The translations under genes and the position numbers were made by a program. A DNA stretch of 64,000 nt from Octopus sinensis. Lineage: Eukaryota. Below the pieces are notes generated by a model. It saw only the letters and a list, made by a program, of their open reading frames with translations. It did no database searches and had not been told where the DNA came from. Within the stretch, counting starts at the first letter, position 1, and each line of letters starts with the position of its first letter. Location of the stretch: positions 14,570,001 to 14,634,000 of the forward strand of contig NC_042997.1 in NCBI RefSeq assembly GCF_006345805.1, in the 5' to 3' direction. Of the stretch, positions 28,088-59,931 are shown in pieces.

Positions 28088-29708
28088 CCAGGTTGAATCA
28101 AAAGTTTTTTTGGATTTTCACCGATGATTTTTGGCAACTTGTATCTTCATGTTATATTATTAATTTTATACAACTTATTGTCTAATCATTACTGAATTGT
28201 TTATTCTTTATTTCCATGTATAACATATAAATATTAATAGTTAACTCTTATCGTAATGAGTGGTGGAAAAATTGCAATTAGAGCCATCAAAGTAGCTAGA
28301 AAAGAAATCAATGATCTGGATGACCTAGGAACTGTCCATGAATGTGTGGTACAAAACTGGTTTAGACGTTTTAAGAAAGGTAACACCTGCCTCAGACTAA
28401 CCCCAGTCAAGAACTTGTGCAGTGAATGACAGCCAAGCACAAGCACTCATACATTATCGGTAGAACTTGCTCATTCACAAAGTACTATACATCAACACCT
28501 CCACAAGCTCAGCTTGCAAACAGACATTGTTGAGAAGCTCCTCTTGAACTAAACAATGACCAGGCTCAACAATTTGTGAAAATTTACAAAAATTGCTGGC
28601 AAATCTTTGAGAAGCTTGTTTTTGGAGTTGTTTGTAACTGGGTTTCAAAAATGGATCTATTTTTGTAATCCTAATAAGAAAAATCAGTGACTGTACTTCA
28701 GAACCTGTGGTCCAACAAGGCAGTTTGTACAGATGGTTGTATGTGTTTGGTAGAATTTTGAGAGGTTGCTGCACTTTAGCTTGTCTCAGATGGTTATACT
28801 GTGAACACTAACCTTTAAGCTAAACAAATACAGCAAGCACATGATGCTTTGAAGACCCTCTACCCAGCATTGGTCAGTAGAAGATGTGTACTCCTACAGC
28901 ATGACAGTGGCCCAACTATTTCTGCCAATATGACCAAGTGCAAACTCAAGTTACTTGAGGAGCTGGAAGTGCTACTCCACCCTGCCGACAGTCCAGACGT
29001 TGTACCATCAGATTACCACCTTTTCCAAGCCATGGCTCATTTTCTGCACTGACAGAGGTTCAACAATGTGGATGAGGTTGGAAAAGGGTGCAGGAAGTCT
29101 TTGCCTCTAAACCAGCCAAATGATATAAGCTTGGAATTGAGCTTCTTGCACAACAATGGCAACAGACAATAGAATAAGATGGGATATATTTTGATGAACA
29201 TATGGTGCCTACTCTGGCACCTGTGCTGGTGGCATGTAAAAAGCACCATCCGTATGTGGCCGATGCCAGCGCCGCCTTGACTGGCTTCCATGTCGGTGGC
29301 ACGTAAAAACCACCAACCAATCGTGGCCGCTGCCAGCCTCCCCTGGCACGTAAAAAGCACCCACTACACTCACGGAGAGCGCCGCCTTGACTGGCTTCCA
29401 TGTCGGTGGCACGTAAAAACCACCAACCGATCGTGGCCGTTGCCAGCCTCCCCTGGCACGTAAAAAGCACCCACTACACTCACGGAGTGGTTGGTGTTAG
29501 GAAGGGCTTCCAGCTGTAGAAACACTTCCAGATCAGACTGGAGCTTGGTGCAGCCTCCTGGCTTCCCAGACCCCGGCTGAACTGTCCAACCCATGCTAGC
29601 ATGGAAAACGGACGTTAAACGATGATGATGATGATGATGATATGTTTTTCATATATAAATTGATTGAACTATTAATTAAAGATATGAAAAACTTTTTACT
29701 CAAGCTGG
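28088..29708 (+). mobile_element. Near full-length degenerate mariner with an RTE 3' fragment inserted at ~29200-29640
   Basis: TA-ccaggttgaatcaaaagtttt ... aaaactttttactcaagctgg-TA; transposase pieces VQNWFRRFKKG, LLQHDSGP, HPADSPDVVPSDYHLF. Confidence 0.85.
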
Positions 29709-38506: not shown

Positions 38507-38849
38507 ATGAACAAACAAATCTTGATAATAATCTTTTTGGTAATTATACCAACGATACATGCTTCTCTAAAGTATCCCCCACACTACTTACAACTATGGC
38601 GTATCTTAGCAAATAGCAAGAATTTATCTAGTTCACCATATCATGATGCTGAAGGCTATAATTATCTGGACAAACTGTCTACAAATAAATATCTTCATAA
38701 CAACAAGCATGAAATTGAGAAAGCTAAGAGTTTGATTTTTGATGATATTTGTGTGAAAATTTCTTCCCTTAATGTATCAAAAAAATGTTGTGAAGATACC
38801 AAAACATTTCTTGGATCCCTTGTTCACAGGTACCCATGGGCACTACAAA
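38507..38849 (+). CDS. nrf-6-like: Gene B exon 1: signal peptide and start of NRF domain, NRF-6/OACYL-like
   Basis: aagaaATG; MNKQILIIIFLVIIPTIHA signal-like segment; ...VSKKCCEDTKTFLGSLVHRYPWALQ + A|gtaagt (phase 1). Confidence 0.88.
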
Positions 38850-39610: not shown

Positions 39611-40275
39611 CATATATATGATGGGCTTCTTTCAGTTTCCGTCTACCAAATCCACATACAAGGCTTTGGTCAGCCCGAGGCTATAGTAGAAGACACTTGC
39701 CCAAGGTGTCCCGCTGTGGGACTGAACCCAGAACCATGAGGCTGGTAAGCAAGCTACATACCACACAGCCAATCCTGCACCTATAACTTACCACACAGCC
39801 TTTAATTTCTAATCATTTGCTCTCTTTAACTTCAATTTTATATATTCATTTACATGGTGGTGCTCCAGCATGACCACAGCTGCATGGCTGAAATGAGTAA
39901 AAGAGTATGTACATCAATAGGTGCAGGTGTGGTTGTGTGGTTAAATAGCTTGCTTCCTAATCTTGTAGTCTCATGTTCAATCCTGCTACATAGCATCTTG
40001 GACAAGTGTCTTCTACTATAGCCCAAAGCCAAATAAAGGTTTTGTGAATGGATTATGAGAATGAAAGCCCATCATGTACATATTCATATACATGCACACA
40101 TACCCACATATGTGTATGTGTGTACATACATACATTCTCTCTCTCTCTCAGAGAGAGAGCAATAAGAAAATGGAAGGGATCAATAGGTGGCATTCAACTT
40201 TTAGACATTATTTTATGTCAATTTATTTATTTACTAAAAGGACAACTTTAACAATATACATATATGTATAACATA

Positions 40276-40668
40276 CTAGCAGTATCGCCTGGCGTTGCTC
40301 GGGTTTGTTTCGACCCTTTAGAATTGGAATTTTTGAAAAGTAAAAATTTCGGATTATGTAGCTTGTTATTCTCTTTAAGTGAACATTTTTCTGGTTGAAA
40401 TACACCGAAAAATGGCAACACAGCAGTCAAAAAATCGTAAAAAAATAGGTATTTTCATAGAAAAAAAGCAACTTTTTGATGTAAATAATTTTTGGTGTTA
40501 ACATTGTCCGATTTGAAATTTTTCTTCTACGGTAGGAAGAGCAAGCCTTCTTCTATCATACTCTCAATTTTGGTCAACTTGCGCCGCAGGGTCTCGGAGG
40601 AGATAGTGTTAGTTGAAGGCTACCAAACCTGCCATACACAGACAACTTCAGCTTTATATATAGAGAGA
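40276..40668 (-). mobile_element. Non-autonomous Helitron, 393 bp
   Basis: Minus strand A|TCTCTCTATATATAAAGCTG...CCCGAGCAACGCCAGGCGATACTGCTAG|T. Confidence 0.85.
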
Positions 40669-42861: not shown

Positions 42862-44495
42862 TACATGTGTCATATATATGAGGCCTCATGGAACTGTTAT
42901 TATAAATATAAATGAAGTAGGGTTTCTTCAGAGGAACTCCATTTTGGTCACTTGTATTTACAATCATAGATCATAGTGATCAAAAGGGTATGATCATGAG
43001 TATCAGGAACCAAAATAGGATTCCTCACTCAATGGAGTGCATAGCTCAGAAATCAGAGAGTTGCTCCTTGTTGAGGTATTTCTCCCATTGAAAGTTTACA
43101 GCTCTGGTACCACAGGTTGTCTGAGGAAAGAATCACAGGGCAGATTTTTATGAATGAGGCCAACTGGTAGGAGACCGAGGGGAAAATCACAAGTGAGATG
43201 GCTGAATAATATTCATAACCTTGGTTGGTTCCAGTTGGGAATCATGTTGGAACATTTATTAATCATTGCTTCTGACAGACTCTGAATGACTTATCAAAGG
43301 ACACTGCTCTGATGACACTCACAGGAATAATGGGATATGAAGATGGATAGATGAATAGTTGAATGAATGGATGGATAGATAAATGAAGTGAAATTACTTT
43401 AAGAACTAAAGCATGATCATTGACTTGGTACAGCAGTAGCTTAAATCTCTAATGTAGCACTTATCATTAGATTGACACAAATATCGATCACCCTTAATTA
43501 AACACAAGATCACTTTGTCAAGGATGGTTACAGTTATTGAATTTATCCTTGTATCATTGTCATCATCATCATTTTTGTGCTTCATGCCGATTGCTAGTAA
43601 AGAGGTTGAATAGAAAAATTATGAACAACAAAATGGGGAAGACTGGATAATTGGAGGTAGAAAGGGTGATGGAAGAATGAGTACTGGAAATAAGAGAAAA
43701 TTATGGGAAAGGAAGTATGATTTGGCTGGAAGAGAGAGAGATAGAGAGAGATTTGATGGTGTTTTATGACTGATTGCATTTCCTGAAGCCAACCCTTTTA
43801 GATGCCTCTTACAAAGTTAAGAACATGCTAAACCTATTCTAAAAATCAGAATGCACAGGCACAGGAGTGGCTGTGTGGTAAGTAGCTTACTTACCAACCA
43901 CATGGTTTCGGGTTCAGTCCCACTGCATGGCACCTTGGGCAAGTGTCTTCTACTATAGCCTCGGGTCGACCAAAGCCTTGTGAGAGAATTTGGTAGATGG
44001 AAACTGAAAGAAGCCTATCGTATATATGTATATATATATATATATATGTATGTATGTGTGTGTATATGTTGTGTATCTGTGTTTGTCCCCCCCAACATCG
44101 CTTGAAAACCGATGCTGGTGTGTTTACGTCCCTATAACTTAGCAGTTCGGCAAAAGAAACTAATAAAATAAGTACTAGGCTTACAAAGAATAAGTCCTGG
44201 TGGCGATTTGATTCAACTAAAGGCGGTGCTCCAGCATGGTCGCAGTCAAATGACTGAAGCAAGTAAAAGAATAAATAATATTTTATTAGCATTTCTGTTA
44301 TTTATTCCAAGGGAATGACTAGCTACTTTGAATATGGTGGGATTTGAACTTAGGACAAAAGAAGATCAAATTAAATGCTTTAATACATTTACTATATCAC
44401 CCTGTTATCTGAAATTTATTTTTGCTCTTTCATCTAAAAAATATTTTCAAAATAATTGTTAAAGATTTTTACATTTTGACATTTTTCTTTTACAG

Positions 44496-44689
44496 TGCTT
44501 GATTCTTATGGGAAGCCACCAAGTGGGATTCTTGAAGGAGACTTCACATTTCCTGGTTCTTTTGATGAATGTAACTCTGCAAAAGTAGCTATTCCTGCCA
44601 ACTCAACAGAATTTATGCTTCAGCCTTTCAAACCAAAATACTGCCAAGTCATCTTTCCAATCAAAGCACTCACAAGTATGAATGATATG
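44496..44689 (+). CDS. nrf-6-like: Gene B exon 2 (NRF domain core)
   Basis: cttttacag acceptor; A+TG restores Met, giving WALQMLDSYGKPPSGILEGDFTFPGSFDEC (NRF-domain signature) ...YCQVIFP...SMNDM|gtatgt, phase 0. Confidence 0.93.
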
Positions 44690-45133
44690 GTATGTAGTCA
44701 TCAAGTTAAAATAATCTATACTCTTTTACTTGTTTCAGTCATTTGACTGTGGCCATGCTAGAGCACTGCCTTTAGTCGAGCAAATCGACCCCAGGACTTA
44801 TTCTTTGTAAGTGTAAGCCTAGTACTTATTCTATCGGTCTCATTTGCTGAACCGCTAAGTTACGGGGATGTAAACACACCAGCATCGGTTGTCAAGCGAT
44901 GTTGGGGGGGACGAACACAGACACACAAATGTATACACACACATACACATATATAAATATATATGATGGGCTTCTTTCAGTTTCCGTCTACCAAATCTAC
45001 TCTCAAAGCTTTGGTCAGCCTGAGGCTATAGTAGGAGATACATGCCCAAGGTGCCACGCAGTGGGACTGAACCCGGAACCATGTGGTTCATAAGCAAGCT
45101 ACTTACCCACACAGCCACTCCAATTTTCATTAA

Positions 45134-45353
45134 CCCTTTAACATATAAACCAGCCACATCCAACCCAAATGTTCTACCTGTTTTATGCTCAGACCGACCA
45201 GATCCAGCTTCTCACACCTACCCTGTAATGTCATTCTAAAAATATTCAATCACATCACTGAAATCTCTAAGCTACAAGATAATGCATGATGCATTCAAAG
45301 TAATGTGAATGTAAAAGCATCACATTTGATTGAGAAATCTGAATGCTAAAGGA
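45134..45353. mobile_element. Degenerate piggyBac-type MITE
   Basis: TTAA-ccctttaacat ... atgctaaagga-ttta. Confidence 0.55.
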
Positions 45354-46730
45354 TTTATGAATCTTTATTATATTATTTGCTTTTCTATATTTCTGTGTGT
45401 GGAGGTGCAATGGCCCAGTGGTTAAGGAAACGGGCTCGCGGTCGTAGGATCGCGGTCTCGATTCCCAGACCGGCCGTTGTGAGTGTTTATTGAGCGAAAA
45501 CACCTAAAAGCTCCACGAGGCTCCGACAGGGGGTGGTGATCCCTTCTGTACTCTTTCTCACACTCTTTCCTCTGTTGGCCTGCTCGCTTAGCCAGCGGGG
45601 TAGCGTCATTCGAAGGCTAAAACAATGCGAACGCATTGTGACCAGCGGTGTGTAACTACATCTGATGGACTGGTCGGTCACATGATGGGTCACGTGATAT
45701 TTCTATGTATTTACTTTAAGAACTGGAAGGATTGAATCATCATCATCCTTTCTATTTTTTTTCTTTACATCTACATTTACCATGCTGGTGGCACATAAAA
45801 AGCACCATAGAGCGTAGTTGATGCCAGTGCCGCCTGACTGGCTCCCGTGCTGGTGGCATGTAAAAAGCACCATGCAAACGTGGTCGATGCCAGTGCCACC
45901 TGACTGGCACCCATGGTGGTGGCATGTAATATGTACCATTTGAACATGGTTGATGCCTATGCCGCCTGACGGGCTCCTGTGCCAGTGGTCAGTGGTCAAT
46001 GCCAGTGCTCTATGGATGGATGAGGAGAGATGTGTGAAGAAGTGACACTCCCAAACAGTTGAAGGAATCCGAAGTAGAGGTAGGCCCAGGAAGAAATGAG
46101 ATGGGGTGGTGAAGCATGACCTTCGAACGCTGGGCGTCACAGAGGCATTGACGAAAGACCGAGACCTCTGGAGATATGCTGTGACTGCAAAGACGGGCAA
46201 ATAAAGTGAGTTCACAGCTGTATCCTACACCAGTTTTGCATAACCACCCCCAGCCCATTCAAAAGTACCTTGGATCATAGAGCAACCTGCTGTGCTTGAG
46301 AAGACCTATAGAGTCAAGTACATCAACATCAAAATGAAAATCAAGTGGAAATTGTAGTTGTGATACTTGTGCCGATGGCACGTAAAAAGCACCATCTGAA
46401 TGTGACCAATACCAGCACCGCCTTGACTGGCTTCCATGCTGGTGGCATATAAAAAGCCATTGCCAGCCTCCTCTGGCCCCTGTGCTGGTGGCACATAAAG
46501 AGCACCAACTACACTCATGGAGTTCTTGGCATTAGGAAGGGCATCCAGCTATAGAAACACTGCCAGATCAGACTGGATCCTGGTGTTCAGCTGGTATTTA
46601 TTTCACCAACCCCAAAAGGATGAAAGGCAAAGTCCACCTTGGTGGAATTTGAACTCAGAACATAATGGCAGACAAAATACTGCTGAGCATTTTGCCTGGT
46701 GTGCTAACTATTCTGCCAGCTTGCCACTTG

Positions 46731-46769
<39 letters not shown>

Positions 46770-47306
46770 GATGATCCTCCTCCTCTTCCTCCATCAACCC
46801 CAGTACTGAGCTGGTACTTATTTTATTGACCCCGAAAGGATGAAAGGCAAAGTCGACCTTGCCAGAGTTTGAACTCAAGACGTAGAAATGGATGAAATAT
46901 CACTAAGCATTTTTCCTGGTGTGCTAACAAGTCTGCCAGCTCGGTGCCTTAATAATAATAATAATAATAATAACAACAACAACAACAACAACAACAATAG
47001 TAATAAAAAAAAGATTATCGGAAGGGTTTTGAGCTCTTGAACGATTACTGAAATCTTGTGGTTATCTAAGGTTACAAGAAGTAACCTGCTACCCACATAA
47101 ATTCTACCAGGAATAAGACCATATATGAGTTGAGTCAAATAATAATAATATGTTGATGATTGTTGTTGTTTTTTAAGATAATAAGAAAAAAATATAGGAA
47201 TTATAAGAGAGAGATAAATGAAATCATAAGTGATATGTACTCTACTTAAGTAGAGTCAACATCGATCAAAAGGTTAATTTGAGAAATTTTAGTTTAATTA
47301 TATATA

Positions 47307-47762
47307 CTAGCTATTTTGACCCCGTGCTTCATTCGGGTTTTGGTGGTGGTGTTGTTTTGTGCGTGTTGTCTCCTTTCCCCTTTCTTCTTTTGTTTGTCTT
47401 CTTTGTCTGGTTCCTTTTATTGCCCTCTTCTTAACCCCGCTTTCCAAAATCCCCCAAATTTTTACACCCACAATTAAAGATAACCACCTCTAGCCCCTGC
47501 AACAACACAAAAAGCCACCATTATTCAAACAGCGCAACCTGTCTATCCCATAAGACTCAATTTTTCCCATATTCTTCACCATGGCAACCAAGCGGTAGCC
47601 CCGAGTGACTTGCAACCCTTCTCACACCATTGCCCACCCCAGTGTAAATTTTCACGCCAATCCAACCCCATCTACAGATCCTTAAACCGTTCCCATCCCA
47701 AAATGAGACAAATAACCAAGAAATCAAACAACTTTTTCGCATTTCAGCTTTATAGATATTGA
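47307..47762 (-). mobile_element. Non-autonomous Helitron, divergent subfamily
   Basis: Minus strand A|TCAATATCTATAAAGCTGAAATG...cccg/cggg hairpin...CTAG|T. Confidence 0.7.
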
Positions 47763-48220
47763 TGGGAGTGAGCTTCTGCTTCTTTAGTTGAAGTTTCAAT
47801 GTAGCTTTCACAAGGTGGTGATCTGCTCCTACATTGGTTCCTTAACAGGTTTGAACATCGATGCTTCCAATGAGCATTAATGCTAACAACATTAGTTTCA
47901 TAGTAGGTGTTCCCATCAGATGATCACCATGTCTATTTATATAGATTGTTTTGTGTAGGAAATAGATGTAGCTGGCGAAAAAGTTGTTTATGTTACAGAA
48001 CAATATCAGGCATTCTTCAATTTCACTGCTTTCTTTATTTGATTCAACAATCAGTTCAATGTCATTTTCTGCTGATCTTCATATTGATGTCACAAATAAG
48101 TATCCTGACATGAAGGCATGCGGCCAAGTGGTTACAGTATTCAACTCACAATAATAAGGCTGTGAGTTCCATTCCCAGCAGCATGCTGTATCCTTGAGCA
48201 AGACTTTTTATTTCACATTA

Positions 48221-50002
48221 TGGGCTTCTTTCAGTTTCTTATTTCTTTACTGCCTACAAGGGGCTACACACAGAGGGGACAAACAAGGACAGACAAATGG
48301 ATTAAGTTGATTATATCGACCCCAGTGCATAAATGGTACTTATTTAATCGACCCCGAAAGGATGAAAGGTAAAGTCGACCTTGGTGGTATTTGAACTCAG
48401 AACGTAATGGCAAACGAAATACCGCTAAGCATTTCACCCGGCGTGCTAACGTTTCTGCCAGCTCGCTGCCTTTCAGTTTCTTTCAGTCTCTGTCAACCAA
48501 ATCCACTTTGGTTGGCCGAGGCTATAGTAGAAGATACTTGCCCAAGGTGCCATGCAGTGGGACTGAACCCGGAACCATGTGGTTGGTAAGCAGGCTACTT
48601 ACCACACAGCCACTCCTACACCTATATGTGTATATATATTATGAATTTCATATTGGTTGGACATAAGCGTTCACCTAACAGCTTATTCAACCAAAGGTTG
48701 GTTGAATAAGTCATTATGCGAAACATTTAAGTCCAGTCAACATGAATTTTATTATAAAACTAGCAGTATCGCCTAGCGTTGCTCAGGTTTGTAAGGGAAA
48801 TAACTATAAAGCATTTTTAGAGAGTTATAGCCAAAAAATAGCAAAAAAATGGAAAAAAAATGATGGTAAATTTTTTTTGAGAGTTAAAAAAGGTGGAGTT
48901 GCGTCCCCTAGACGGTCTGTGGTTTGGGTTTCTGATTCTCGACCCCATGTCAAATTTATCGATTTTTTTCAGAACTGGGGGAACTTTTCACAATTTTCGC
49001 TGCGTTAGTTTTGAATTATGACATTGGGCTATGTGTGTGTCAAGTTTCATCAGAATCGGTTGAAAGCCGTGGTCAGAGTGAGGGTACGAGAAAACAGACA
49101 CACAGAAAACGCACCGACAAACTGCCGTTTATATAGAGAGAGATCTGATTCTACTTTCAGTTTTGAGTCACATATTACCTTACATGAGAACACGCAAGGG
49201 TTTGATGCAGGAAGGACATCTACCTGTAGAAAAATCTATCTCAACATATTCTGTCTGGTTCACGTAAACATGGGAAAGTAGACGTTAAAATTATGATGAT
49301 ACACATACACTCACACACACACATACACACACACACACATACTGACACGCACACACACACACATGCACATACACATGTATATGTATGTGTGTGTTGTTTT
49401 TTAATTTGTAAATTAAATTAGATCACATGAATAAACTAATTTGGTTGAATTGGCCTTTTGGTCTGTTGGTTTTTGGTTCGTTAGCACCCGAGAGTAATCC
49501 TTATCATCACGTTTCATTTTCATTATCTTTCTACCTATCTTTCTCCTCCTCTTCTTCATTATCAATTTAAAACTTCGCAGTATTTTCAGATGTGTGTGTG
49601 TGTGTGTGTGTGTAGTATGAAGTTCAACAAGTAACACTTGATCATTTAAGATAGTATGGATATTATTAAAATAATACTGTTAAAAAGCCTTTAGAAATAC
49701 AGCTAGCCTGGGTTTCCTGGTTGAAATATTAATTCATTTTGCCATTTGTCAGGCTGGCATAAACAAGAAAATTTAGTAAATGTGTTTGAAATAACTGAGC
49801 TTTGATTTTGTATGTACATTTAGAAATGTACAGTGCAGGAGTGGCTGTGTGGTAAGTAGCTTGCTAAACAACCACATGGTTCCAGGTTCAGTCCCACTGC
49901 GTGGCATCTTGGGCAAGTGTCTTCTGCTATAGCCCCGGGCCGACCAATGCCTTGTGAGTGGATTTGGTAGACGGAAACTGAAAGAAGCCTGTCGTATATA
50001 TG

Positions 50003-50035
<33 letters not shown>

Positions 50036-51416
50036 TTGTGTGTCTGTGTTTGTCCCCCTAGCATTGCTTGACAACCGATCCTGGTGTGTTTACATCTCCG
50101 TCACTTAGCGGTTCGGCAAAAAGAGACTGATAGAATAAGTACTGGGCTTACAAAGAATAAGTCCTGGGGTCGATTTGCTCGACTAAAGGCGGTGCTCCAG
50201 CATGGCCGCAGTCAAATGACTGAAACAATTAAAAGAGTAAAGAGTAAAGAGTAATATCACAGAGCGATCCAGAGGGGATAATTAACTGCACAGGAAATAT
50301 AAGCTGTGTTTTACAAGAATAAAAGGTTAGATAAACCAACACTAGAATGGGCTATGGTGTGTTTGGTGGGTAATCCTTAATTACTGCTATGATGAATTTT
50401 GTAAAATATGAACATGAAGCAGGAGTGGCTGTGTGGTAAGTAGCTTGCTTACCAACCACAGAGTTCCAGGTTCAGTCCCACTGCGTGGCAACTTGGGCAA
50501 GTGTCTTCTACTATAACCTCAGGCAATCAAAGCCTTGTGAGTAGATTTGGTAGACGGAAACTAAAAGAAGCCCGTCATGTATATGTATATGTGTGTGTGT
50601 TTGTCCCCCCAACATCGCTTGACAACCAATGCTGGTGTGCTAAGGTCCCCGTAACTTAGCGGTTTGGCAAAAGAGACCGATAGAATAAGTACTAGGCTTA
50701 CAAAGAATAAGTCCTAGGGTCGATTTGCTTGACTAAGCCTAGTACTTATTCTATCGGTCTCTTTTGCCAAACCGCTAAGTTACGGGGACCTAAACACACC
50801 AGCATTGGTTGTCAAACGATGTTGGGAGGACAAACACAAACACACACACATATACATATATGTATATATGACGGGCTTCTTTTAGTTTCCGTCTACCAAA
50901 TCCACTCACAAGGCTTTGATTGCCTGAGGTTATAGTAGAAGACACTTGTCCAAGTTGCCATGCAGTGGGACTGAACCTGGAACTCTGTGGTTGGTAAGCA
51001 AGCTACTTACCACACAGCCACTCCTGCTTCATGTTCATATTTTACAAAATTCATCATAGCAGTAATTAAGGATTACCCACCAAACACACCATGGCCCATT
51101 CTAGTGTTGGTTTATCTAACCTTTTATTCTTGTAAAACACAGCTTAAATTTCCTGTGCAGTTAATTATCCCCTCTGGATCGCTCTGTGATATTACTCTTT
51201 ACTCTTTTACTTGTTTCAGTCATTTGACTGCGGCAAGCTGGAGCACCGCCTTTAGTCGAGCAAATCGACCCCGGGACTTATTCTTTGTAAGCCCAGTACT
51301 TATTCTATCGGTCTCTTTTTGCCGAACCGCTAAGTGACGGAGATGTAAACACACCAGGATCGGTTGTCAAGCAATGCTAGGGGGACAAACACAGACACAC
51401 AAACACACACACATAC

Positions 51417-51493
<77 letters not shown>

Positions 51494-52893
51494 TATGACA
51501 GGCTTCTTTCAGTTTCCGTCTACCAAATCCACTCACAAGGCATTGGTCGGCCCGGGGCTATAGCAGAAGATACTTGCCCAAGATGCCACGCAGTGGGACT
51601 GAACCCGGAACCATGTGGTTGTTTAGCAAGCTACTTACCACACAGCCACTCCTGCACTGTACATTTCTAAATGTACATACAAAATCAAAGCTCAGTTATT
51701 TCGAACACATTTACTAAATTTTCTTGTTTATGCCAGCTTGACAAATGGCAAAATAAATTAATATTTCAACCAGGAAACCCAGGCTAGCTGTATTTCTAAA
51801 GGCTTTTTAGCAGTATTATTTTATTAATATCCTTACTATCTTAAATGATCAAGTGTTATTTGTTGAACTTCATACTACACACACACACACATACACATCT
51901 GAAAACACTGCGAAGTTTTAAATTGATAATGAAGAAGAGGAGGAGAAAGATAGGTAGAAAGATAATGAAAATGAAACGTGATGATAAGGATTACTCTCGG
52001 GTGCTAACGAACCAAAAACCAACAGACCAAAAGGCCAATTCAACCAAATTAGTTTATTCATGTGATCTAATTTAATTTACAAATTAAAAAACAACACACA
52101 CACACATATACATGTGTATGTGCATGTAAGTGTGCATGTGTGTGTGTGTCAGTATGCGTGTGTGTGTCAGTGTGTGTATGTGTGTGAGTGTATGTGTATC
52201 ATCGTAATTTTAACGTCTACTTTCCCATGTTTACGTGAACCAGACAGAATATGTTGAGATAGATTTTTCTACAGGTAGATGTCCTTCCTGCATCAAACCC
52301 TTGCGTGTTCTCATGTAAGGTAATATGTGACTCAAAACTGAAAGTAGAATCAGATTTTATAATAAAATTCATGTTGACTGGACTTAAATGTTTCACATAA
52401 TGACTTATTCAACCAACCTTTGGTTGAATAAGCTGTTAGGTGAACGCTTATGTCCAACCAATATGAAATTCATAATATATATACACATATAGGCGTAGGA
52501 GTGGCTGTGTGGTAAGTAGCCTGCTTACCAACCACATGGTTCCGGGTTCAGTCCCACTGCATGGCACCTTGGGCAAGTATCTTCTACTATAGCCTCGGCC
52601 AACCAAAGTGGATTTGGTTGACAGAGACTGAAAGAAACTGAAAGGCAGCGAGCTGGCAGAAACGTTAGCACGCCGGGTGAAATGCTTAGCGGTATTTCGT
52701 TTGCCATTACGTTCTGAGTTCAAATACCACCGAGGTCGACTTTACCTTTCATCCTTTCGGGGTCGATTAAATAAGTACCATTTATGCACTGGGGTCGATA
52801 TAATCAACTTAATCCATTTGTCTGTCCTTGTTTGTCCCCTCTGTGTGTAGCCCCTTGTAGGCAGTAAAGAAATAAGAAACTGAAAGAAGCCCA
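48221..52893. repeat. 4,673 bp fold-back inverted duplication (arms 48221-50700 and 50734-52893, 33 bp spacer)
   Basis: Unique (non-repeat) sequence is mirrored, e.g. ORF pairs 48391-48666(+)/52448-52723(-) and 49413-49637(-)/51845-52075(+); scattered substitutions and microsatellite length differences. Confidence 0.95.
48760..49143 (-). mobile_element. Non-autonomous Helitron, 384 bp, present in the left arm only
   Basis: Minus strand A|TCTCTCTCTATATAAACGGCAG...CCTGAGCAACGCTAGGCGATACTGCTAG|T; empty site gaatcaga|ttttataat near 52354; no TSD. Confidence 0.92.
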
Positions 52894-54022
52894 GCGTATA
52901 TATATATATATATATATATCATCATCATCATCATCGATTAACGTCCGTTCTCCATGCTAGCATGGGTTGGACGGTTCGACCGGGGATCTGGGAAGCCAGA
53001 TGGCTGCACCAGGCTCCAGTCTTATCTGGCAATGTTTCTACAGCTGGATGCCCTTCCTAATGCCAACCACTCCGTGAGTGTAGTGGGTGCTTTTTACGTG
53101 CCACCCGCACAGGTGCCAGGCGAGGCTGGCAACGGCCACGGTCGGATTGGTGCATTTTATGTGCCACCGGAACGGAAGCCAGTCGAGGCGGCGCTGGCAT
53201 ATATATATATATATATATGGATGGATGGATGAAAGAAAGACTGTGAAAATACAGAGCTTGTATCTCCCAACAATGGGGAGAGGATAAGAGTTGAACAGAC
53301 TCAAAAAATACAAGCTATTTGGTGAAGGAAGATGTAACACGTTATTAAGATGACCTACAATGAACCACAGACCAGATATGTAGTTGTTGCAAGGTTCCAA
53401 CAAATGGAAAGTGACTTAATGATTCAATAATTTAGTAAATAAAGCAATAGAAGCTAAAAAGCTGACTTGGATGTGATAAGTGAAAAACAAAACTGAAAAT
53501 AACAGGAAAAAAGCAGATGCAAAAGACTATATCATCATCATCATCGTTTAACGTCTGCTTTCCATGGGTTGGACGGTTCAACTGGAGTCTGGGAAGCCCG
53601 AAGGCTGCACCAGGCCAGTCAGATCTGGCAGTGTTTCTCCAGCTGGATGCCCTTCCTAACGCCAACCACTCCGTGAGTGTAGTGGGTGCTTTTTATGTGC
53701 CACCGACACAGGTGCCAATGAGGCTGGCGAACAGCCACGCTCAGATGGTGTTTTTTTTTTTGTGCCAACGGCCACGCTCGGATGGTGTTTTTTACGTGCC
53801 ACCGGCACGGAGGCCAGTGAGGCTGGCACGGCCACGATCGGATGGTGTTTGTAACGTGCCCACAGCACGGAGGCCAGTCGATGCGGTACTGGCTATGGCC
53901 ACGTTTGGATGGTTTTCTTATGTGCCACCGGCACTGGTACCACAAAAATACAAATTCCATTGATGTTCATCGATTTTGATACTCGAAGTATACTATATTT
54001 TTCTTACTTCTAGGTTCCTTAA

Positions 54023-54233
54023 CCCATTAAAAGCTATAGTTCAGTTATGAATATTTATAAGTTTTTCATATTTTGATAATATTTCTTCTGTTATATTGCA
54101 TATTTTAGTTGTATACTTGAAGAATACGGTAAATATGAAGTTTATAACAAAAGAGACATAAGAGACTATAAAGTCTTATTTATATTAGTTTTAAAATCTT
54201 TATCCCCCAAATGGGACATTGGCCATTAATGGG
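54023..54233. mobile_element. piggyBac-type MITE, 211 bp
   Basis: TTAA-CCCATTAA...TTAATGGG-TTAA. Confidence 0.7.
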
Positions 54234-54520
54234 TTAACTTATCACCTGTCATCATATTATATAACTTTCTAATAATGTGTGTGTGTTCATATGTAAACTA
54301 AACAGCCTTACATATTTTTTTTTAGTTTGTTTTCTTTTGTTTGTGGGTCATATATATATGACTAAATATATATATATATCAGATGCTACATCTTCTAAGA
54401 CACGAGTGTATTGTACATTTGTTTGGTTTGTACCACAAGAAAAACAAGTCATTCACACTTCTTAGATAAGAGTGTATTGCACATTTATGAGTTTTGTACC
54501 CCAAAATAAATAAAATTAGC

Positions 54521-54561
<41 letters not shown>

Positions 54562-56754
54562 AATGTGTGTGTATATATATATATATATGAGAGAGCAAGA
54601 AATGGTACGTGATGATAAGTACTATACTTAAGTAATCAGCCAAAAGGCCAGTTCATAAGTTCACTTATGTAATCTTGTGTAATTCGTGTGTTATAAGTTT
54701 ATCTGCATGTGTGCATGCATGTATGTGCATGTGCATCTATGCATATCAGGTTATTCACATGCATGCATTACAGCTGATATGCAGTTTGGTACAACCTGCT
54801 GCATGTTCAGGTTGTTTGTCAACTAAACTGAGTCTTATCTAGGCTTATCTGGGGAGGAAGGGTTGCTAGAAACGCAGTAAATCAAAAGATAATATTTGTC
54901 AAAAGAATGTATGAACTCAACATCAGATCTATGATTATAAAAAAATTGTGTGGGCACATAGAAATACTCTTGCTGGTGAATGAGTCCACTACAGGACCAC
55001 TCAAATATGTAGAACCAGCTTCTTATTCAGCTTCTTATTGTCCAAGTCAATGCTGAACCCCAGCATGGCTGCGAGCTGGCAGAATCGTTAGCACGCTGGA
55101 CGAAAATGCTTAGCTGTATTTCATCTGCTGTTACGTTCTGAGTTTAAATTCTGCCGAGGTCGACTTTGCCTTTCATCCGTTCGGGGTCGATTAAATAAGT
55201 ACCAGTTACGCACTGGGGTCGATGTAATCGACTTAAACCCCTTGTTTGTCCTCTCTATCTTTAGCCCCCTGTGGGCAATAAAGAAATAAATGCTGAACCC
55301 CCAGAAAGAAAGAGGCTCTGTCTAAAATGTGAGTGGTGTTCTGTCAATGGTTTACTTACTGTAATGAATTTCACACCTAGGAATTCCTTAGGAAACAACT
55401 CTAGAAAAAAACAAAATCTTGCAGCAACAGGGATAGTGGAACATAGAGGTTTACCTTGCTGGAAATATATGATGACAAACTTACACATGTGGAGATGCAA
55501 TGGCCCAGTGGTTAGAGCAGAGGACTCGCAGTCAGAAGATCGTGGTTTTGATTCCCAGACTGGGCGTTGTGTGTATTTATTGCGCAAAAACACCTAAAGC
55601 TCCATGATGCTCCGGCAGGGGGTGGTAGTGACCCCTGTTGTACTCTTTCGCCCCAACTTTCTCTCACTCTCTCTTCCTGTTCTTTGAGTAACACTGTGAT
55701 GGACCGGCGTCCCGTCCAGCTGGGGGAAAAACATACACCACAGAAACCGGGAAACTGGGCTCATGACCCTGGCTAGGCTTGAAAAAGGTGTGTAAATAAA
55801 TAAAAAAAACTTACACATGGGTGGCTTGGAATATGGATCGCTTCTTTCCCAAATTACAATGATGGAATTGGTTCAGCAGCATCTCAGGTAACTGAGTAAT
55901 TGTTTGCAGGGACAGCACTGCTCACCTGCAAGGATATAGAACAGGTAATCATAACAAAATTTGCTTAATTCTGGAACTGGCCAGCAATTCCACAGCTGGT
56001 AGTTGTCCTCTCTTTGTGTGTTTCCACAATAATATCATTCTGTATTCAACTGGTACTTATTTTATTGACTTCGAAAGGATGAAGGGCAAAGTTGACCCTG
56101 GAGGAATTTCAACTCAGAATGTAAAGTAAAAAAAAAAAAAATGTTGCTAAGCAATTTTCTTAACACAGTAAAAATTCTGCCAGTTTGCCGCCTTGGTTAC
56201 CATATTTATGTGGAGGTGCAATGGCCCAGTGGTTAGGGCAGCGGACTCGCGGTCGTAGGATCGCGGTTTCAATTCCCAGACCGGGTGTTGTGAGTGTTTA
56301 TTGAGCGAAAACACCTAAAAGCTCCACGAGGCTCCGGCAGGGGATGGTGGTGATCCCTGCTGTACTCTTTCACCACAACTTTCTCTCACTCTTACTTCCT
56401 GTTTCTGTTGTACCTGTATTTCAAAGGGCCGGCCTTGTCACTCTCTGTGCCATGCTGAATATCCCCGAGAATTACATTAAGGGTACACGTGTCCGTGGAG
56501 AGCTCAGCCACTTACAAGTTAAATTCACTAGCAGGCTGTTCCGTTGATCGGATCAACCGGAATCGTCGTCGTCGTAACCAACAGAGTGCTTCCATCCATC
56601 CACCATATTTATATTAATCACATTTATACCACATTGTTATTTCTTTCATGGTTATGCAACAACTCAGTGACTGGAACCAATAAGAGAGTAAAAGACAAGA
56701 GATATGTCTTTGCTAATTCTATTTTTCTTTTTCTTTTTTTTTTTGAATTTTCAG

Positions 56755-56845
56755 TTGGTTGGTGGATCAATAGGTGGTCTCCATATGGGTGCATGCTTTC
56801 CAGACAGTTGTCAGGCAAAAGACATTCAAAATCTTATTCAATATG
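56755..56845 (+). CDS. nrf-6-like: Gene B exon 3 (end of NRF domain)
   Basis: Long T tract then tttcag; LVGGSIGGLHMGACFPDSCQAKDIQNLIQY-G|gtaagt (G.C.P.SC...D motif); phase 0 in matches exon 2. No further exon recognised in the window. Confidence 0.9.
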
Positions 56846-58545: not shown

Positions 58546-58941
58546 TCTTTATATATAAAAGTCAAGTTGTGTGTCTGTCTCCTACGATTTAGATTCCTAA
58601 CTACTCCCACATTTTGCGGTGCAGTTTAACCAAAACCGGGTATCTTATAGTCGTGATTCATATCGAGCCCTTCTGGGTATTAGCGCGCGTCTACGATGAG
58701 TCTACAATTTAAAAAAAAAATTACCATCATTTTTTCCATTTTAATGCATTTTTTCGCTATTATATAAGGGAAGTAACTCTCTAAAAATGTCTACGATGAG
58801 TCAACGATTTAAAAAAAAAATTACCATCATTTTTTTTCCATTTTTATGCATTTTTTTGCTATCTTTTGGCTATAACTCTCTAAAAATGCTTATATAGTTA
58901 TTTCCCTTACAAACCCGAGCAACGCCGGGCGATACTGCTAG
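58546..58941 (+). mobile_element. Non-autonomous Helitron, 396 bp, with internal ~100 bp tandem duplication
   Basis: A|TCTTTATATATAAAAG...CCCGAGCAACGCCGGGCGATACTGCTAG|T. Confidence 0.88.
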
Positions 58942-59119
58942 TTGAACATAAAAATTGTAATTGTAATGAAACGTATACTGTATCATGGTCTTAAATTCCA
59001 GTCTTCCTTTAGTAACCCTGTTGTTTTAGATCGATGTATAGAATTATGTATTTATGTAAATATACTGTAGTTTTAAAGTGTATGTATAATCTCTTAATAT
59101 AATGAGCAGTGTCTTTTAT

Positions 59120-59630
59120 ATATTTGTATATATATATATATATATGTTTATAGATATATATATATATATGTATGTATATATATTTATAGATATATATGTA
59201 TATATATTTATAGATATATATGTATATATATTTGTAGATATATATATATGTATATATTTGTAGATATATATATATATATATATGTGTGTGTATATTTGTA
59301 GATATATATATATGTATATTTGTAGATATATATATATGTATATTTGTATATATATATATTATATTATATTTGTATATATATATATATTTATATTTGTATA
59401 TATATATATATATTTATATTTGTATATATATATATATATTTATATTTGTATATATATATATATTATATTTGTATATATATATATAATATATATATATTTG
59501 TATATATATATATATATGTATATTTGTATATATATATATATATGTATATTTGTATATATATATATATATATGTATATATTTGTATATATATATATATATA
59601 TGTATATTTGTATATATATATATATATATA
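59120..59630. repeat. (TA)n-TTTG satellite-like array
   Basis: Units tatttgtatatatata of variable length. Confidence 0.95.
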
Positions 59631-59931
59631 TCATCATCATCATCGTTTAATGTCTGCTTTCCATGCTAGCATGGGTTGGACAGTTCAACTGGGGTCTGGG
59701 AAGCCCGAAGGCTGCACCAGGCCAGTCAGATCTGGCAGTGTTTCTACAGCTGGATGCCCTTCCTAACGCCAACCACTCCGTGAGTGTAGTGGGTGCTTTT
59801 TATGTGCCACCGACACAGGTGCCAGACGAGGCTGGCAAACGGCCACGCTCGGATGGTGTTTTTTATGTGCCACCGACACAGGTGACAGACGAGGCTGGTG
59901 AATGGCCACGCTCGGATGGTGCTTTTTTTTG

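What the first reader, a model, noticed from the sequence alone, without database searches (positions are those of the whole stretch)
48221..52893. 4.7 kb intronic fold-back palindrome: potential ~2 kb dsRNA hairpin in gene B pre-mRNA
Seen: two ~2.1 kb arms, including unique sequence, are reverse complements separated by only 33 bp inside intron 2 of the NRF-6-like gene. They differ by scattered substitutions, microsatellite lengths and a one-sided Helitron insertion. Established: long near-spacerless palindromes are usually unstable, and coleoid cephalopods have very active ADAR A-to-I editing concentrated in dsRNA repeats. Inference: this is an old, tolerated palindrome that could be a hyper-editing or endo-siRNA substrate, or affect splicing of the 12 kb intron.
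Basis: partly seen in the sequence, partly recalled or inferred. Interest (0 to 1): 0.8.

Follow-up and report, generated by a model that had tools for sequence, protein, structure and literature searches.

The report
Intronic 4.7 kb inverted duplication
A 2.1 kb piece of an intron was copied backwards next to itself a few million years ago, leaving a real hairpin-forming palindrome that is most likely a neutral by-product of DNA repair, of a kind already known to be common in octopus genomes.

Summary
The left arm is 48221-50700, the loop is 33 nt (50701-50733) and the right arm is 50734-52893. The arms align colinearly with 2047 matches and 39 mismatches (1.87%; 32 transitions, 7 transversions) and 8 indels. 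One indel is a 384-nt Helitron-like insertion found only in the left arm. About 0.9 kb of each arm occurs nowhere else in the window, so this is a segmental inverted duplication, not a chance pair of SINEs.

It lies in the 12,065-nt intron 2 of a + strand NRF-domain gene. Exons 1-3 have GT-AG splice sites and give Pfam NRF at E=2.5e-23.

Both breakpoints are visible. The centre cuts a SINE copy at ...gac|TAA, with 3-nt microhomology and a 33-nt loop. The outer breakpoint sits at the edge of a (TA)n tract. This matches a fold-back or template-switch repair event, roughly 2-3 My old.

Changes are split evenly between the arms (7:7). Transitions that keep or break RNA pairing are also even (16:16), so the locus looks neutral. 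The transcribed intron would fold into a ~2.07 kb duplex (MFE -3984 kcal/mol), a plausible ADAR substrate. Editing, siRNAs and read support could not be tested. It is a new member of a known kind, of low to moderate interest.

The parts
48221..50700 (.). Left arm, the inverted copy (2480 nt, or 2096 nt without the Helitron-like insertion). It is a mosaic of SINE family A (48239-48473), SINE-B cores (48478-48642, 49833-50261, 50419-50700), a small MITE-like self-complementary element (about 48637-48756), microsatellites and window-unique sequence.
48760..49143 (-). 384-nt non-autonomous Helitron-like insertion, present only in the left arm. Read on the minus strand it starts TCTCTCTCTATATA, ends GATACTGCTAG, sits between A and T with no target-site duplication, and has a short hairpin about 12 nt before its 3' end. 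The empty site in the right arm is at 52355/52356.
   Evidence: Two more family copies with matching 3' ends lie at 40267-40660 (-) and ending at 58942 (+); the TC... start after A is seen only in the 40267-40660 copy.
50701..50733 (.). 33-nt unpaired loop or spacer (caaagaataagtcctagggtcgatttgcttgac). It continues the SINE-B consensus from the left arm, so it is ancestral sequence rather than filler.
50734..52893 (.). Right arm (2160 nt). Its outer end runs on naturally into the SINE-B 3' tail and (TA)n tract, so it is the ancestral copy on that side.
50731..50736 (.). Central breakpoint J2 (50733|50734). Ten other SINE-B copies in the window read ...gacTAAAGGCGG; here the sequence reads ...gacTAAgcctag. 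This gives 3 nt (TAA/TTA) of microhomology for a fold-back.
48219..48222 (.). Outer breakpoint J1 (48220|48221). The left flank, which is unique in the window, is joined to the position that in the right arm lies just before the (TA)n tail. There is no microhomology and no target-site duplication.
44690..56754 (+). Intron 2 (12,065 nt) of gene B, which hosts the palindrome.
38507..38849 (+). Gene B exon 1 (signal peptide and start of the NRF domain); splice donor GTAAGT.
44496..44689 (+). Gene B exon 2 (NRF domain: LDSYGKPPSGILEG...).
56755..56844 (+). Gene B exon 3 (end of the NRF domain).

Best explanation
This is a genuine germline inverted segmental duplication (a fold-back, DUP-INV type event) inside intron 2 of an NRF-domain, NRF-6-like gene.

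Origin (inferred from the two junctions). A break or stalled fork arose inside a SINE copy. The exposed 3' end (...gacTAA) snapped back onto a TTA 33 nt upstream, or switched to the complementary template. It then copied about 2.1 kb in reverse. The copy ended at the edge of a (TA)n tract and was joined to the left flank without homology, with loss of some ancestral sequence.

History since (shown by the sequence). Both arms have drifted independently and neutrally to 1.9% divergence. Microsatellites changed length, and a 384-nt Helitron-like element landed in one arm.

Effect (inferred). When the host gene is transcribed, the intron folds co-transcriptionally into a near-perfect RNA duplex of about 2.07 kb, with a 33-nt loop and a 384-nt bulge. 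Its most likely fate is promiscuous A-to-I hyper-editing by ADAR followed by ordinary intron turnover. It would be one of many such substrates, with no dedicated function.
For: Structure:
- The arms are colinear and include sequence unique in the window.

Natural mutation spectrum rather than read error:
- 32 transitions against 7 transversions, and the only large indels are a transposon and microsatellites.
- Polarising against the SINE consensus gives 7 derived changes in the left arm and 7 in the right.

Breakpoints:
- At the centre, ten other SINE-B copies read gacTAAAGGCGG where this locus reads gacTAAgcctag.
- The right arm's outer end continues the SINE tail, while the left junction is novel.
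- The 33-nt loop with a very short stem matches the large-loop ssDNA hairpins that mediate fold-back inversions in MRE11/SAE2-proficient yeast, where the median loop is about 36 nt and stems can be as short as 4 bp (PMC7467729).

Helitron-like insertion:
- It starts TC, ends CTAG, sits at an A|T target, has a 3' hairpin, and has two further copies in the window. It therefore post-dates the duplication.

Gene context:
- The three exons splice GT-AG into a complete Pfam NRF domain, E=2.5e-23.

RNA fold:
- MFE is -3984 kcal/mol against about -1188 for shuffles. There are 2067 arm-to-arm pairs, and the longest uninterrupted helix is 399 bp.

Neutrality:
- Of the 32 transitions, 16 leave a G:U pair in the + strand RNA and 16 give A.C mismatches.
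- No Pfam domain is found in any frame of the arm.

Context:
- Octopus has the strongest hyper-editing signal among the metazoans surveyed, and 4.4e-3 of loci lie in long near-perfect dsRNA (PMC5625713).
- Most octopus editing is in introns and 3'UTRs (PMC9699675).
Against: - No independent sequence supports either junction. Arm and junction ORFs are not in the contig collection, and the junction and unique-arm patterns are absent from metagenome contigs.
- No reads, RNA-seq or small-RNA data were available, so transcription of the gene, editing and dicing are all untested.
- A substitution divergence of 1.9% plus an insertion polymorphism could in principle also be allelic.
- The outer 539 nt are less diverged than the rest: 0.56% against 2.3%, p=0.008, or p=0.036 without microsatellites. 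A single-age neutral model does not predict this.
- The stem microhomology is 3 nt, one less than the shortest stems reported in yeast.
- The organism was not identified directly.
Confidence: 0.72

Rival explanations
1. Assembly artefact. Either a fold-back chimeric long read, or two haplotypes of one 2.1 kb segment, were joined head to head, so that the real genome carries a single copy.
For: - Palindromic chimeras are a known long-read artefact (own knowledge).
- The arm differences (about 1.9% substitutions, microsatellite lengths, presence or absence of a transposon) are of the kind also seen between alleles.
- Nothing independent confirms the junctions.
Against: - A fold-back read would stay palindromic out into the right flank. 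Instead the left arm stops at 48221 against a non-palindromic flank that is unique in the window. Two separate false joins within 2.5 kb would therefore be needed.
- The arms are not identical, as the two strands of one molecule would be.
- The differences are dominated by transitions (32:7) and split 7:7 between the arms, so they are not read noise.
- There are no N gaps and the locus is not near a contig end.
Confidence: 0.12
2. A selected hairpin-RNA locus. The palindrome would be kept because its dsRNA yields endo-siRNAs (against SINEs, Helitrons or a target gene), or because it tunes splicing or expression of the NRF-6-like gene. Arm-to-arm gene conversion might keep part of it nearly identical.
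For: - The duplex is very long, with perfect runs of up to 399 bp.
- The outer 539 nt are 99.4% identical, less diverged than the rest, as gene conversion would produce.
- hpRNA loci of this geometry make functional siRNAs in Drosophila (PMC10317233, listed).
- The palindrome has survived about 2-3 My with a short spacer.
Against: - Pairing-preserving and pairing-breaking transitions are equal, 16:16.
- A 384-nt insertion and several indels are tolerated in the stem.
- No gene-derived sequence is detectable in the arms, whereas hpRNAs derive from their target genes.
- There is no promoter of its own; it is an intron passenger.
- In the octopus small-RNA study consulted, 'siRNA' and 'Dicer' occur nowhere in the text. 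The paper search for cephalopod endo-siRNA or hpRNA work listed none, judging by titles and abstracts only.
- The identity contrast is marginal once microsatellites are excluded (p=0.036).
Confidence: 0.06
3. A mobile element with very long terminal inverted repeats (a Foldback-like transposon), or two copies of a composite element inserted head to head.
For: The shape fits: two long inverted arms with a tiny middle, and arms rich in repeats.
Against: - There is no target-site duplication (flanks ...cacatta and gcgtata...).
- The inner arm ends fall in the middle of a SINE copy, and the left arm reads 33 nt further into that SINE.
- The outer end falls inside a SINE tail that continues into the flank. 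The arm ends are therefore breakpoints, not element termini.
- The arms are not built of tandem subrepeats.
- The non-SINE parts have no other copy in the 64 kb window.
Confidence: 0.03

Closest known systems
Fold-back inversions or inverted duplications formed by ssDNA-hairpin priming or template switching (yeast GCR fold-backs, PMC7467729; human DUP-INV/MMBIR-type rearrangements; cancer fold-back inversions)
   Same: An inverted copy lies directly beside its template. The loop is short and asymmetric, 33 nt against a median of about 36 nt in repair-proficient yeast. There is microhomology at the turn-around point. A second junction was needed to resolve the event.
   Different: - It is small (2.1 kb), interstitial and fixed in a germline assembly, rather than a chromosome-scale rearrangement followed by breakage-fusion-bridge cycles.
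- The stem is only 3 nt.
- The second junction has no homology, whereas yeast events are mostly resolved by homologous recombination.
Inverted SINE pairs (such as IR-Alu) as intramolecular dsRNA and ADAR hyper-editing substrates; octopus hyper-edited loci (PMC5625713, PMC9699675)
   Same: It is intronic, rich in SINEs, and forms an intramolecular duplex in a pre-mRNA. The expected fate is promiscuous A-to-I editing.
   Different: - The arms are about 5 times longer than the longest SINE pair in this window, at 98% rather than 74-92% identity.
- They include non-repeat sequence.
- The loop is 33 nt rather than hundreds to thousands of nt.
- Editing itself was not observed here.
Drosophila hpRNA loci (endo-siRNA hairpins)
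   Same: A long inverted repeat with a short loop that could feed Dicer.
   Different: hpRNAs are their own transcription units and are inverted duplicates of the genes they silence. Here the arms hold only intronic, SINE and microsatellite sequence with no protein domain. No small-RNA data are available.
Large sex-chromosome palindromes (human Y P1-P8) kept similar by arm-to-arm gene conversion
   Same: The arm structure is palindromic, and one part (the outer 539 nt) is more similar than the rest.
   Different: It is orders of magnitude smaller, has no genes in the arms, and shows 98.1% rather than over 99.9% identity. Evidence for conversion is marginal.
Non-autonomous Helitrons (applies to the 384-nt one-sided insertion only)
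   Same: 5' TC, 3' CTAG, a subterminal hairpin, insertion between A and T without a target-site duplication, and several copies.
   Different: There is no Rep/helicase ORF, and the family was seen only as three copies in this window.

Membership tests
Fold-back / template-switch inverted duplication | The inverted copy is adjacent to its template and colinear through non-repeat sequence. | tested here: met
Fold-back / template-switch inverted duplication | A short asymmetric spacer that is ancestral sequence, with microhomology at the turn-around junction. | tested here: met
   The 33-nt spacer continues the SINE consensus. TAA is shared by the consensus continuation and the inverted arm. The microhomology is only 3 nt.
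Fold-back / template-switch inverted duplication | One arm remains in its ancestral context, and a second novel junction closes the event. | tested here: met
   The right arm plus flank follows the SINE-B tail consensus. The junction at 48220|48221 is novel. No outgroup was available to confirm the ancestral state.
Foldback-type transposon / long-TIR element | Target-site duplication, and defined element termini shared by other copies. | tested here: not met
   There is no TSD. The arm ends lie inside SINE copies. The unique parts have no other copy in the window. Genome-wide copy number could not be tested.
Foldback-type transposon / long-TIR element | Arms built of tandem subrepeats. | tested here: not met
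   Tandem Repeats Finder finds only microsatellites.
ADAR hyper-editing substrate (editing-enriched intramolecular dsRNA) | A long, stable intramolecular duplex on the transcribed strand of an expressed gene. | tested here: inconclusive
   The duplex is predicted: MFE -3984 kcal/mol, 2067 arm-to-arm pairs. The locus lies on the sense strand of an intact-looking gene start. Expression is unknown.
ADAR hyper-editing substrate (editing-enriched intramolecular dsRNA) | Clusters of A>G mismatches in RNA-seq that are absent from DNA. | not testable with these tools
   No RNA-seq access.
hpRNA / endo-siRNA locus | 21-22 nt small RNAs from both arms with the Dicer overhang signature. | not testable with these tools
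   No small-RNA data.
hpRNA / endo-siRNA locus | Arms derived from a target gene. | tested here: not met
   No Pfam domain in six frames of the arm. The arm content is SINE, microsatellite and unique intronic sequence. A very short or diverged gene fragment cannot be excluded.
Helitron (the 384-nt insertion) | 5'-TC, 3'-CTRR, subterminal 3' hairpin, and insertion at A|T without a TSD. | tested here: met
   The hairpin stem shows a T-A to C-G paired change between copies.
Helitron (the 384-nt insertion) | Rep/helicase protein (for autonomous elements). | tested here: not met
   At 384 nt it is too short, so it would be a non-autonomous derivative.
Assembly fold-back artefact | Palindromy continues into the flank or to a contig end, the arms are near-identical, and a gap or N run is nearby. 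| tested here: not met
   Read-level support could not be tested.
NRF-6-like gene (host gene B) | N-terminal NRF domain (PF20146). | tested here: met
   E=2.5e-23, covering the full profile 1-121.
NRF-6-like gene (host gene B) | C-terminal acyltransferase-3 membrane domain. | not tested
   The downstream exons lie beyond exon 3 or outside the window. The neighbouring gene A does match that region of the cephalopod homologues.

The most novel reading that the evidence does not exclude
The palindrome is a young, actively maintained hairpin-RNA locus. Arm-to-arm gene conversion would keep the outer 0.5 kb nearly identical. Its intronic dsRNA would be diced into endo-siRNAs that act on the SINE or Helitron families it contains, or its editing-dependent unwinding would set the splicing rate of the NRF-6-like gene. 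That would make it a first documented hpRNA-type locus in a cephalopod.
Probability: 0.05. Interest if true: 0.7.

Novelty: new member of a known kind. Interest (0 to 1): 0.27.

Why it matters
- It is a clean natural example of a fold-back inverted duplication. Both breakpoints are readable to the base, and three markers date it: the age of the SINEs, the arm divergence and a later Helitron hit. Such events are mostly known from yeast assays, cancer genomes and human disease alleles.
- It shows that a 2.1-kb-arm palindrome with a 33-nt spacer can persist for an estimated couple of million years in an animal germline.
- It offers a well-defined, very long dsRNA test substrate for cephalopod ADAR and Dicer studies.
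- It does not by itself reveal a new mechanism or function.

Tried and rejected
- Independent confirmation of the junctions. Exact-product look-ups of ORFs across the centre (50729-50935), in the arms (50987-51337, 48391-48666) and of exon 1 found nothing. Exact DNA patterns for the central junction and for a unique arm segment found nothing in metagenome contigs. No eukaryotic genome collection was available.
- Identifying the organism or an orthologue. Word-indexed protein searches with exon 1 and with gene A exons found nothing. The full HMMER search gave only paralogue-level hits, the best being cephalopod at 36-47%. The orthologous intron in another species could therefore not be examined.
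- Known RNA families. There is nothing at gathering thresholds in the window. Sub-threshold hits in the palindrome all lie in microsatellites. ARAGORN calls no tRNAs.
- Transposon with long TIRs. Rejected: no TSD, and the arm ends lie inside SINE copies.
- Chance SINE-SINE pairing. Rejected: the arms are colinear through about 0.9 kb of window-unique sequence.
- Higher divergence towards the centre, as a sign of palindrome 'centre revision'. Not significant once microsatellites are excluded (p=0.12).
- Selection for RNA pairing. Rejected by the 16:16 split of transitions.
Full report
**Observation.** The palindrome is real and sits at the stated coordinates. The repeat finder and a BLAST of the left half against the reverse complement of the right half give three colinear blocks:

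- 48221-48759 = rc(52355-52893): 539 nt, 99.4% identical, no gaps.
- 49143-50025 = rc(51465-52355): 96.6% identical.
- 49995-50700 = rc(50734-51443): 95% identical.

The two arms are 33 nt apart (50701-50733). A global alignment of the arms has 2047 matches, 39 mismatches (1.87%; JC 0.019) and eight indel events. These are a 384-nt insertion in the left arm only, 52 extra nt of (TA)n in the right arm, and indels of 12, 7, 6, 4, 2 and 1 nt, most of them in or beside simple repeats. The window has no N runs.

**What the arms are made of.** With the palindrome masked, BLAST against the rest of the window shows each arm to be a mosaic. It contains interspersed repeats and microsatellites. The repeats are a family here called SINE-A at 48239-48473, and three copies or part-copies of a tRNA-like family here called SINE-B at 48478-48642, 49833-50261 and 50419-50700. 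It also contains four stretches with no other copy in the window: 48643-48749, 48879-49302 (partly the insertion), 49374-49832 and 50262-50418. The arms are colinear through all of these. This is therefore a segmental inverted duplication and not a lucky juxtaposition of inverted SINEs.

For scale, the window holds 30 other inverted pairs of at least 80 nt within 6 kb. All are SINE-SINE pairs of at most 431 nt and 74-92% identity.

**Gene context.** On the + strand, three exons join in frame with canonical GT-AG sites: 38507-38849, 44496-44689 and 56755-56844. They give a 209-aa N-terminus with a signal-peptide-like start and a complete Pfam NRF domain (PF20146, E=2.5e-23, profile positions 1-121 of 121). 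The alignment to the closest full-length relative is continuous across the exon 2-3 join, so no exon is missing between them. Intron 2 is 44690-56754 (12,065 nt), and the palindrome lies inside it on the sense strand.

The closest proteins in a 1.8-billion-protein HMMER search include several from cephalopods:

- Octopus sinensis XP_029656584.2 and O. vulgaris CAI9744290.1.
- Argonauta hians.
- Sepia pharaonis.

Identity is only 36-47% for gene B and 57-63% for the 3' exons of an upstream paralogue, gene A. A cephalopod origin is therefore likely but not proven here. Two word-indexed protein searches found nothing.

**The one-sided insertion.** The left-only 384 nt (48760-49143), read on the minus strand, begin TCTCTCTCTATATA and end GATACTGCTAG. 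They sit between an A and a T with no target-site duplication. The empty site is intact in the right arm (GAATCAGA|TTTTATAAT). Two further copies occur in the window. The copy at 40267-40660 (-) has both ends: TC... after an A, and ...CTGCTAG before a T. The copy ending at 58942 (+) shows only the 3' end...CTGCTAG before a T; its 5' end was not located. A short hairpin about 12 nt before the 3' end carries a paired T-A to C-G change between two of the copies. The element inserted after the duplication.

**The breakpoints.**

- *Centre.* Ten other SINE-B copies in the window read ...gatttgct(c/t)gacTAAAGGCGGTGCTCC at this point. At the centre of the palindrome the sequence reads ...gatttgcttgacTAAgcctagtactt, which is the reverse complement of the left arm. 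The left arm and the 33-nt spacer are therefore one uninterrupted SINE. The switch to the opposite strand happens right after gac, with TAA shared by both templates (3-nt microhomology with the TTA at 50698-50700).
- *Outer ends.* The right arm runs on into the normal SINE-B tail (gaaactgaaagaagccca|gcgtatatat; other copies read ...gaagccca|tcatatatat). The left arm abuts unrelated sequence that is unique in the window (...tttcacatta|tgggcttc), with no microhomology and no target-site duplication.

Taking these together, the left arm plus spacer is the inverted copy. The event needed two joins. The outer one lies at the edge of a (TA)n tract.

This is the pattern expected from a 3' end folding back on itself, or a polymerase switching to the complementary template, copying about 2.1 kb and then being rejoined. 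In yeast, fold-back inversions arise from ssDNA hairpins. In MRE11/SAE2-proficient cells these have loops with a median of about 36 nt and stems as short as 4 bp (PMC7467729). The 33-nt loop fits that class; the 3-nt stem is slightly shorter. The mechanism is inferred, not shown.

**Real or artefact?**

- A single fold-back chimeric read would remain palindromic into the right flank. Here the left arm ends against a non-palindromic flank, so two independent false joins within 2.5 kb would be needed.
- The arm differences have a biological spectrum: 32 transitions against 7 transversions.
- Polarising the SINE-borne differences against the family consensus gives 7 derived changes in the left arm and 7 in the right. 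Two copies evolving independently would give this.
- These features do not exclude two alleles joined in inversion, and no read data or independent assembly could be reached.

I put the artefact at about 0.12.

**Age.** A recent Octopus vulgaris repeat study equates JC distances of 0.065, 0.09, 0.12 and 0.2 with 18, 25, 33 and 56 My, which is about 0.0036 per site per My (PMC13282606). If that clock applies, a JC distance of 0.019 between the arms means about 2.6 My. This is younger than the SINEs inside, which show about 10% divergence between copies, and older than the Helitron hit.

The outer 539 nt are less diverged (3 mismatches, 0.56%) than the rest (2.3%). Fisher's test gives p=0.008, or p=0.036 without microsatellite sites. 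This could be arm-to-arm gene conversion or chance, and I leave it unexplained. Divergence is not significantly higher next to the centre once microsatellites are excluded (p=0.12).

**What it does.** On the + strand RNA the 4673-nt region folds to -3984 kcal/mol, against about -1188 for three shuffles. There are 2067 arm-to-arm pairs and uninterrupted helices of up to 399 bp. With a 33-nt loop the duplex should form as soon as the right arm is transcribed.

By analogy with inverted SINE pairs in other animals, the likely fate is nuclear ADAR hyper-editing and intron decay. Two octopus reports fit this:

- Octopus has the strongest hyper-editing signal among the metazoans surveyed, and an exceptionally high fraction of loci (4.4e-3) in long near-perfect dsRNA (PMC5625713).
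- Most octopus editing is in introns and 3'UTRs, and editing very rarely alters splice sites (PMC9699675).

There is no sign of selection on the structure. Of the 32 transitions between the arms, 16 leave a G:U pair and 16 create an A.C mismatch in the sense RNA. A 384-nt bulge and several indels are tolerated. No frame of the arm has a protein domain, whereas Drosophila hpRNAs derive from their target genes. No exon lies in the loop, so this pair alone should not drive back-splicing. Editing, dicing and any splicing effect remain untested.

**On stability.** The literature agrees that longer arms, higher identity and shorter spacers make palindromes more fragile. Inverted Alus with a 12-bp spacer stall forks in eukaryotic cells, whereas a 52-bp spacer largely does not (PMC7999016). 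A 33-nt spacer falls between these two cases. The 384-nt heterology and the 1.9% divergence were gained later. Persistence is notable but not paradoxical.

**Verdict.** The locus is a well-resolved new example of two known things: a fold-back inverted duplication and an intronic long-dsRNA locus. Interest is low to moderate.

Noticed in passing
window 43864-44285 and 44707-45121: An inverted SINE pair (431 nt aligned, 84% identity) brackets exon 2 of gene B (44496-44689), with only 422 nt between the arms. This is the classic geometry for back-splicing (circRNA) or exon skipping.
   Followed up: no
window 40267-40660 (-) and about 58560-58942 (+): Two further copies of the ~385-395 nt Helitron-like element. 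Both end GATACTGCTAG before a T, and the first starts TCTCTCTATATA after an A. The 3' hairpin shows a paired T-A to C-G change between copies. The 5' end of the second copy was not located.
   Followed up: partly
window 3449-3580, 7181-7369, 8492-8638, 13241-13348 (+): The last exons of a second NRF-6-like gene (gene A), upstream of gene B on the same strand. They are 47-63% identical to Octopus vulgaris, Sepia pharaonis and Argonauta hians homologues, so the two genes form a tandem pair.
   Followed up: partly
window 48221-48759 versus 49143-50700: The outer 539 nt of the arms are markedly less diverged (0.56%) than the inner 1.55 kb (2.3%): p=0.008, or p=0.036 excluding microsatellites. This could be arm-to-arm gene conversion or chance.
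   Followed up: partly
window 48637-48756 (mirror 52358-52477): A self-complementary, MITE-like element of about 120 nt inside each arm (ATGAATTTCATATTGGTTGGAC ... GTCCAGTCAACATGAATTTTAT). The Helitron-like element inserted right at its edge.
   Followed up: no
window ~13400-18100: A block of more than 4 kb of very AT-rich TA/TATG-type simple repeat, GC 20-22%, between gene A and gene B.
   Followed up: no
window 10426-11242 (+): A fragment of a LINE-type reverse transcriptase (Pfam RVT_1, E=1.7e-8) in the last intron of gene A (between the exons at 8492-8638 and 13241-13348), split over two reading frames.
   Followed up: no
window 52901-53100 and at least 15 other sites (e.g. 59611-59806, 29457-29657, 22351-22532): An abundant repeat family that begins catcatcatc...gattaacgtccgttctccatgctagcatgggttggacggttcgacc and is usually preceded by (TA)n. 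One copy directly flanks the right arm.
   Followed up: no
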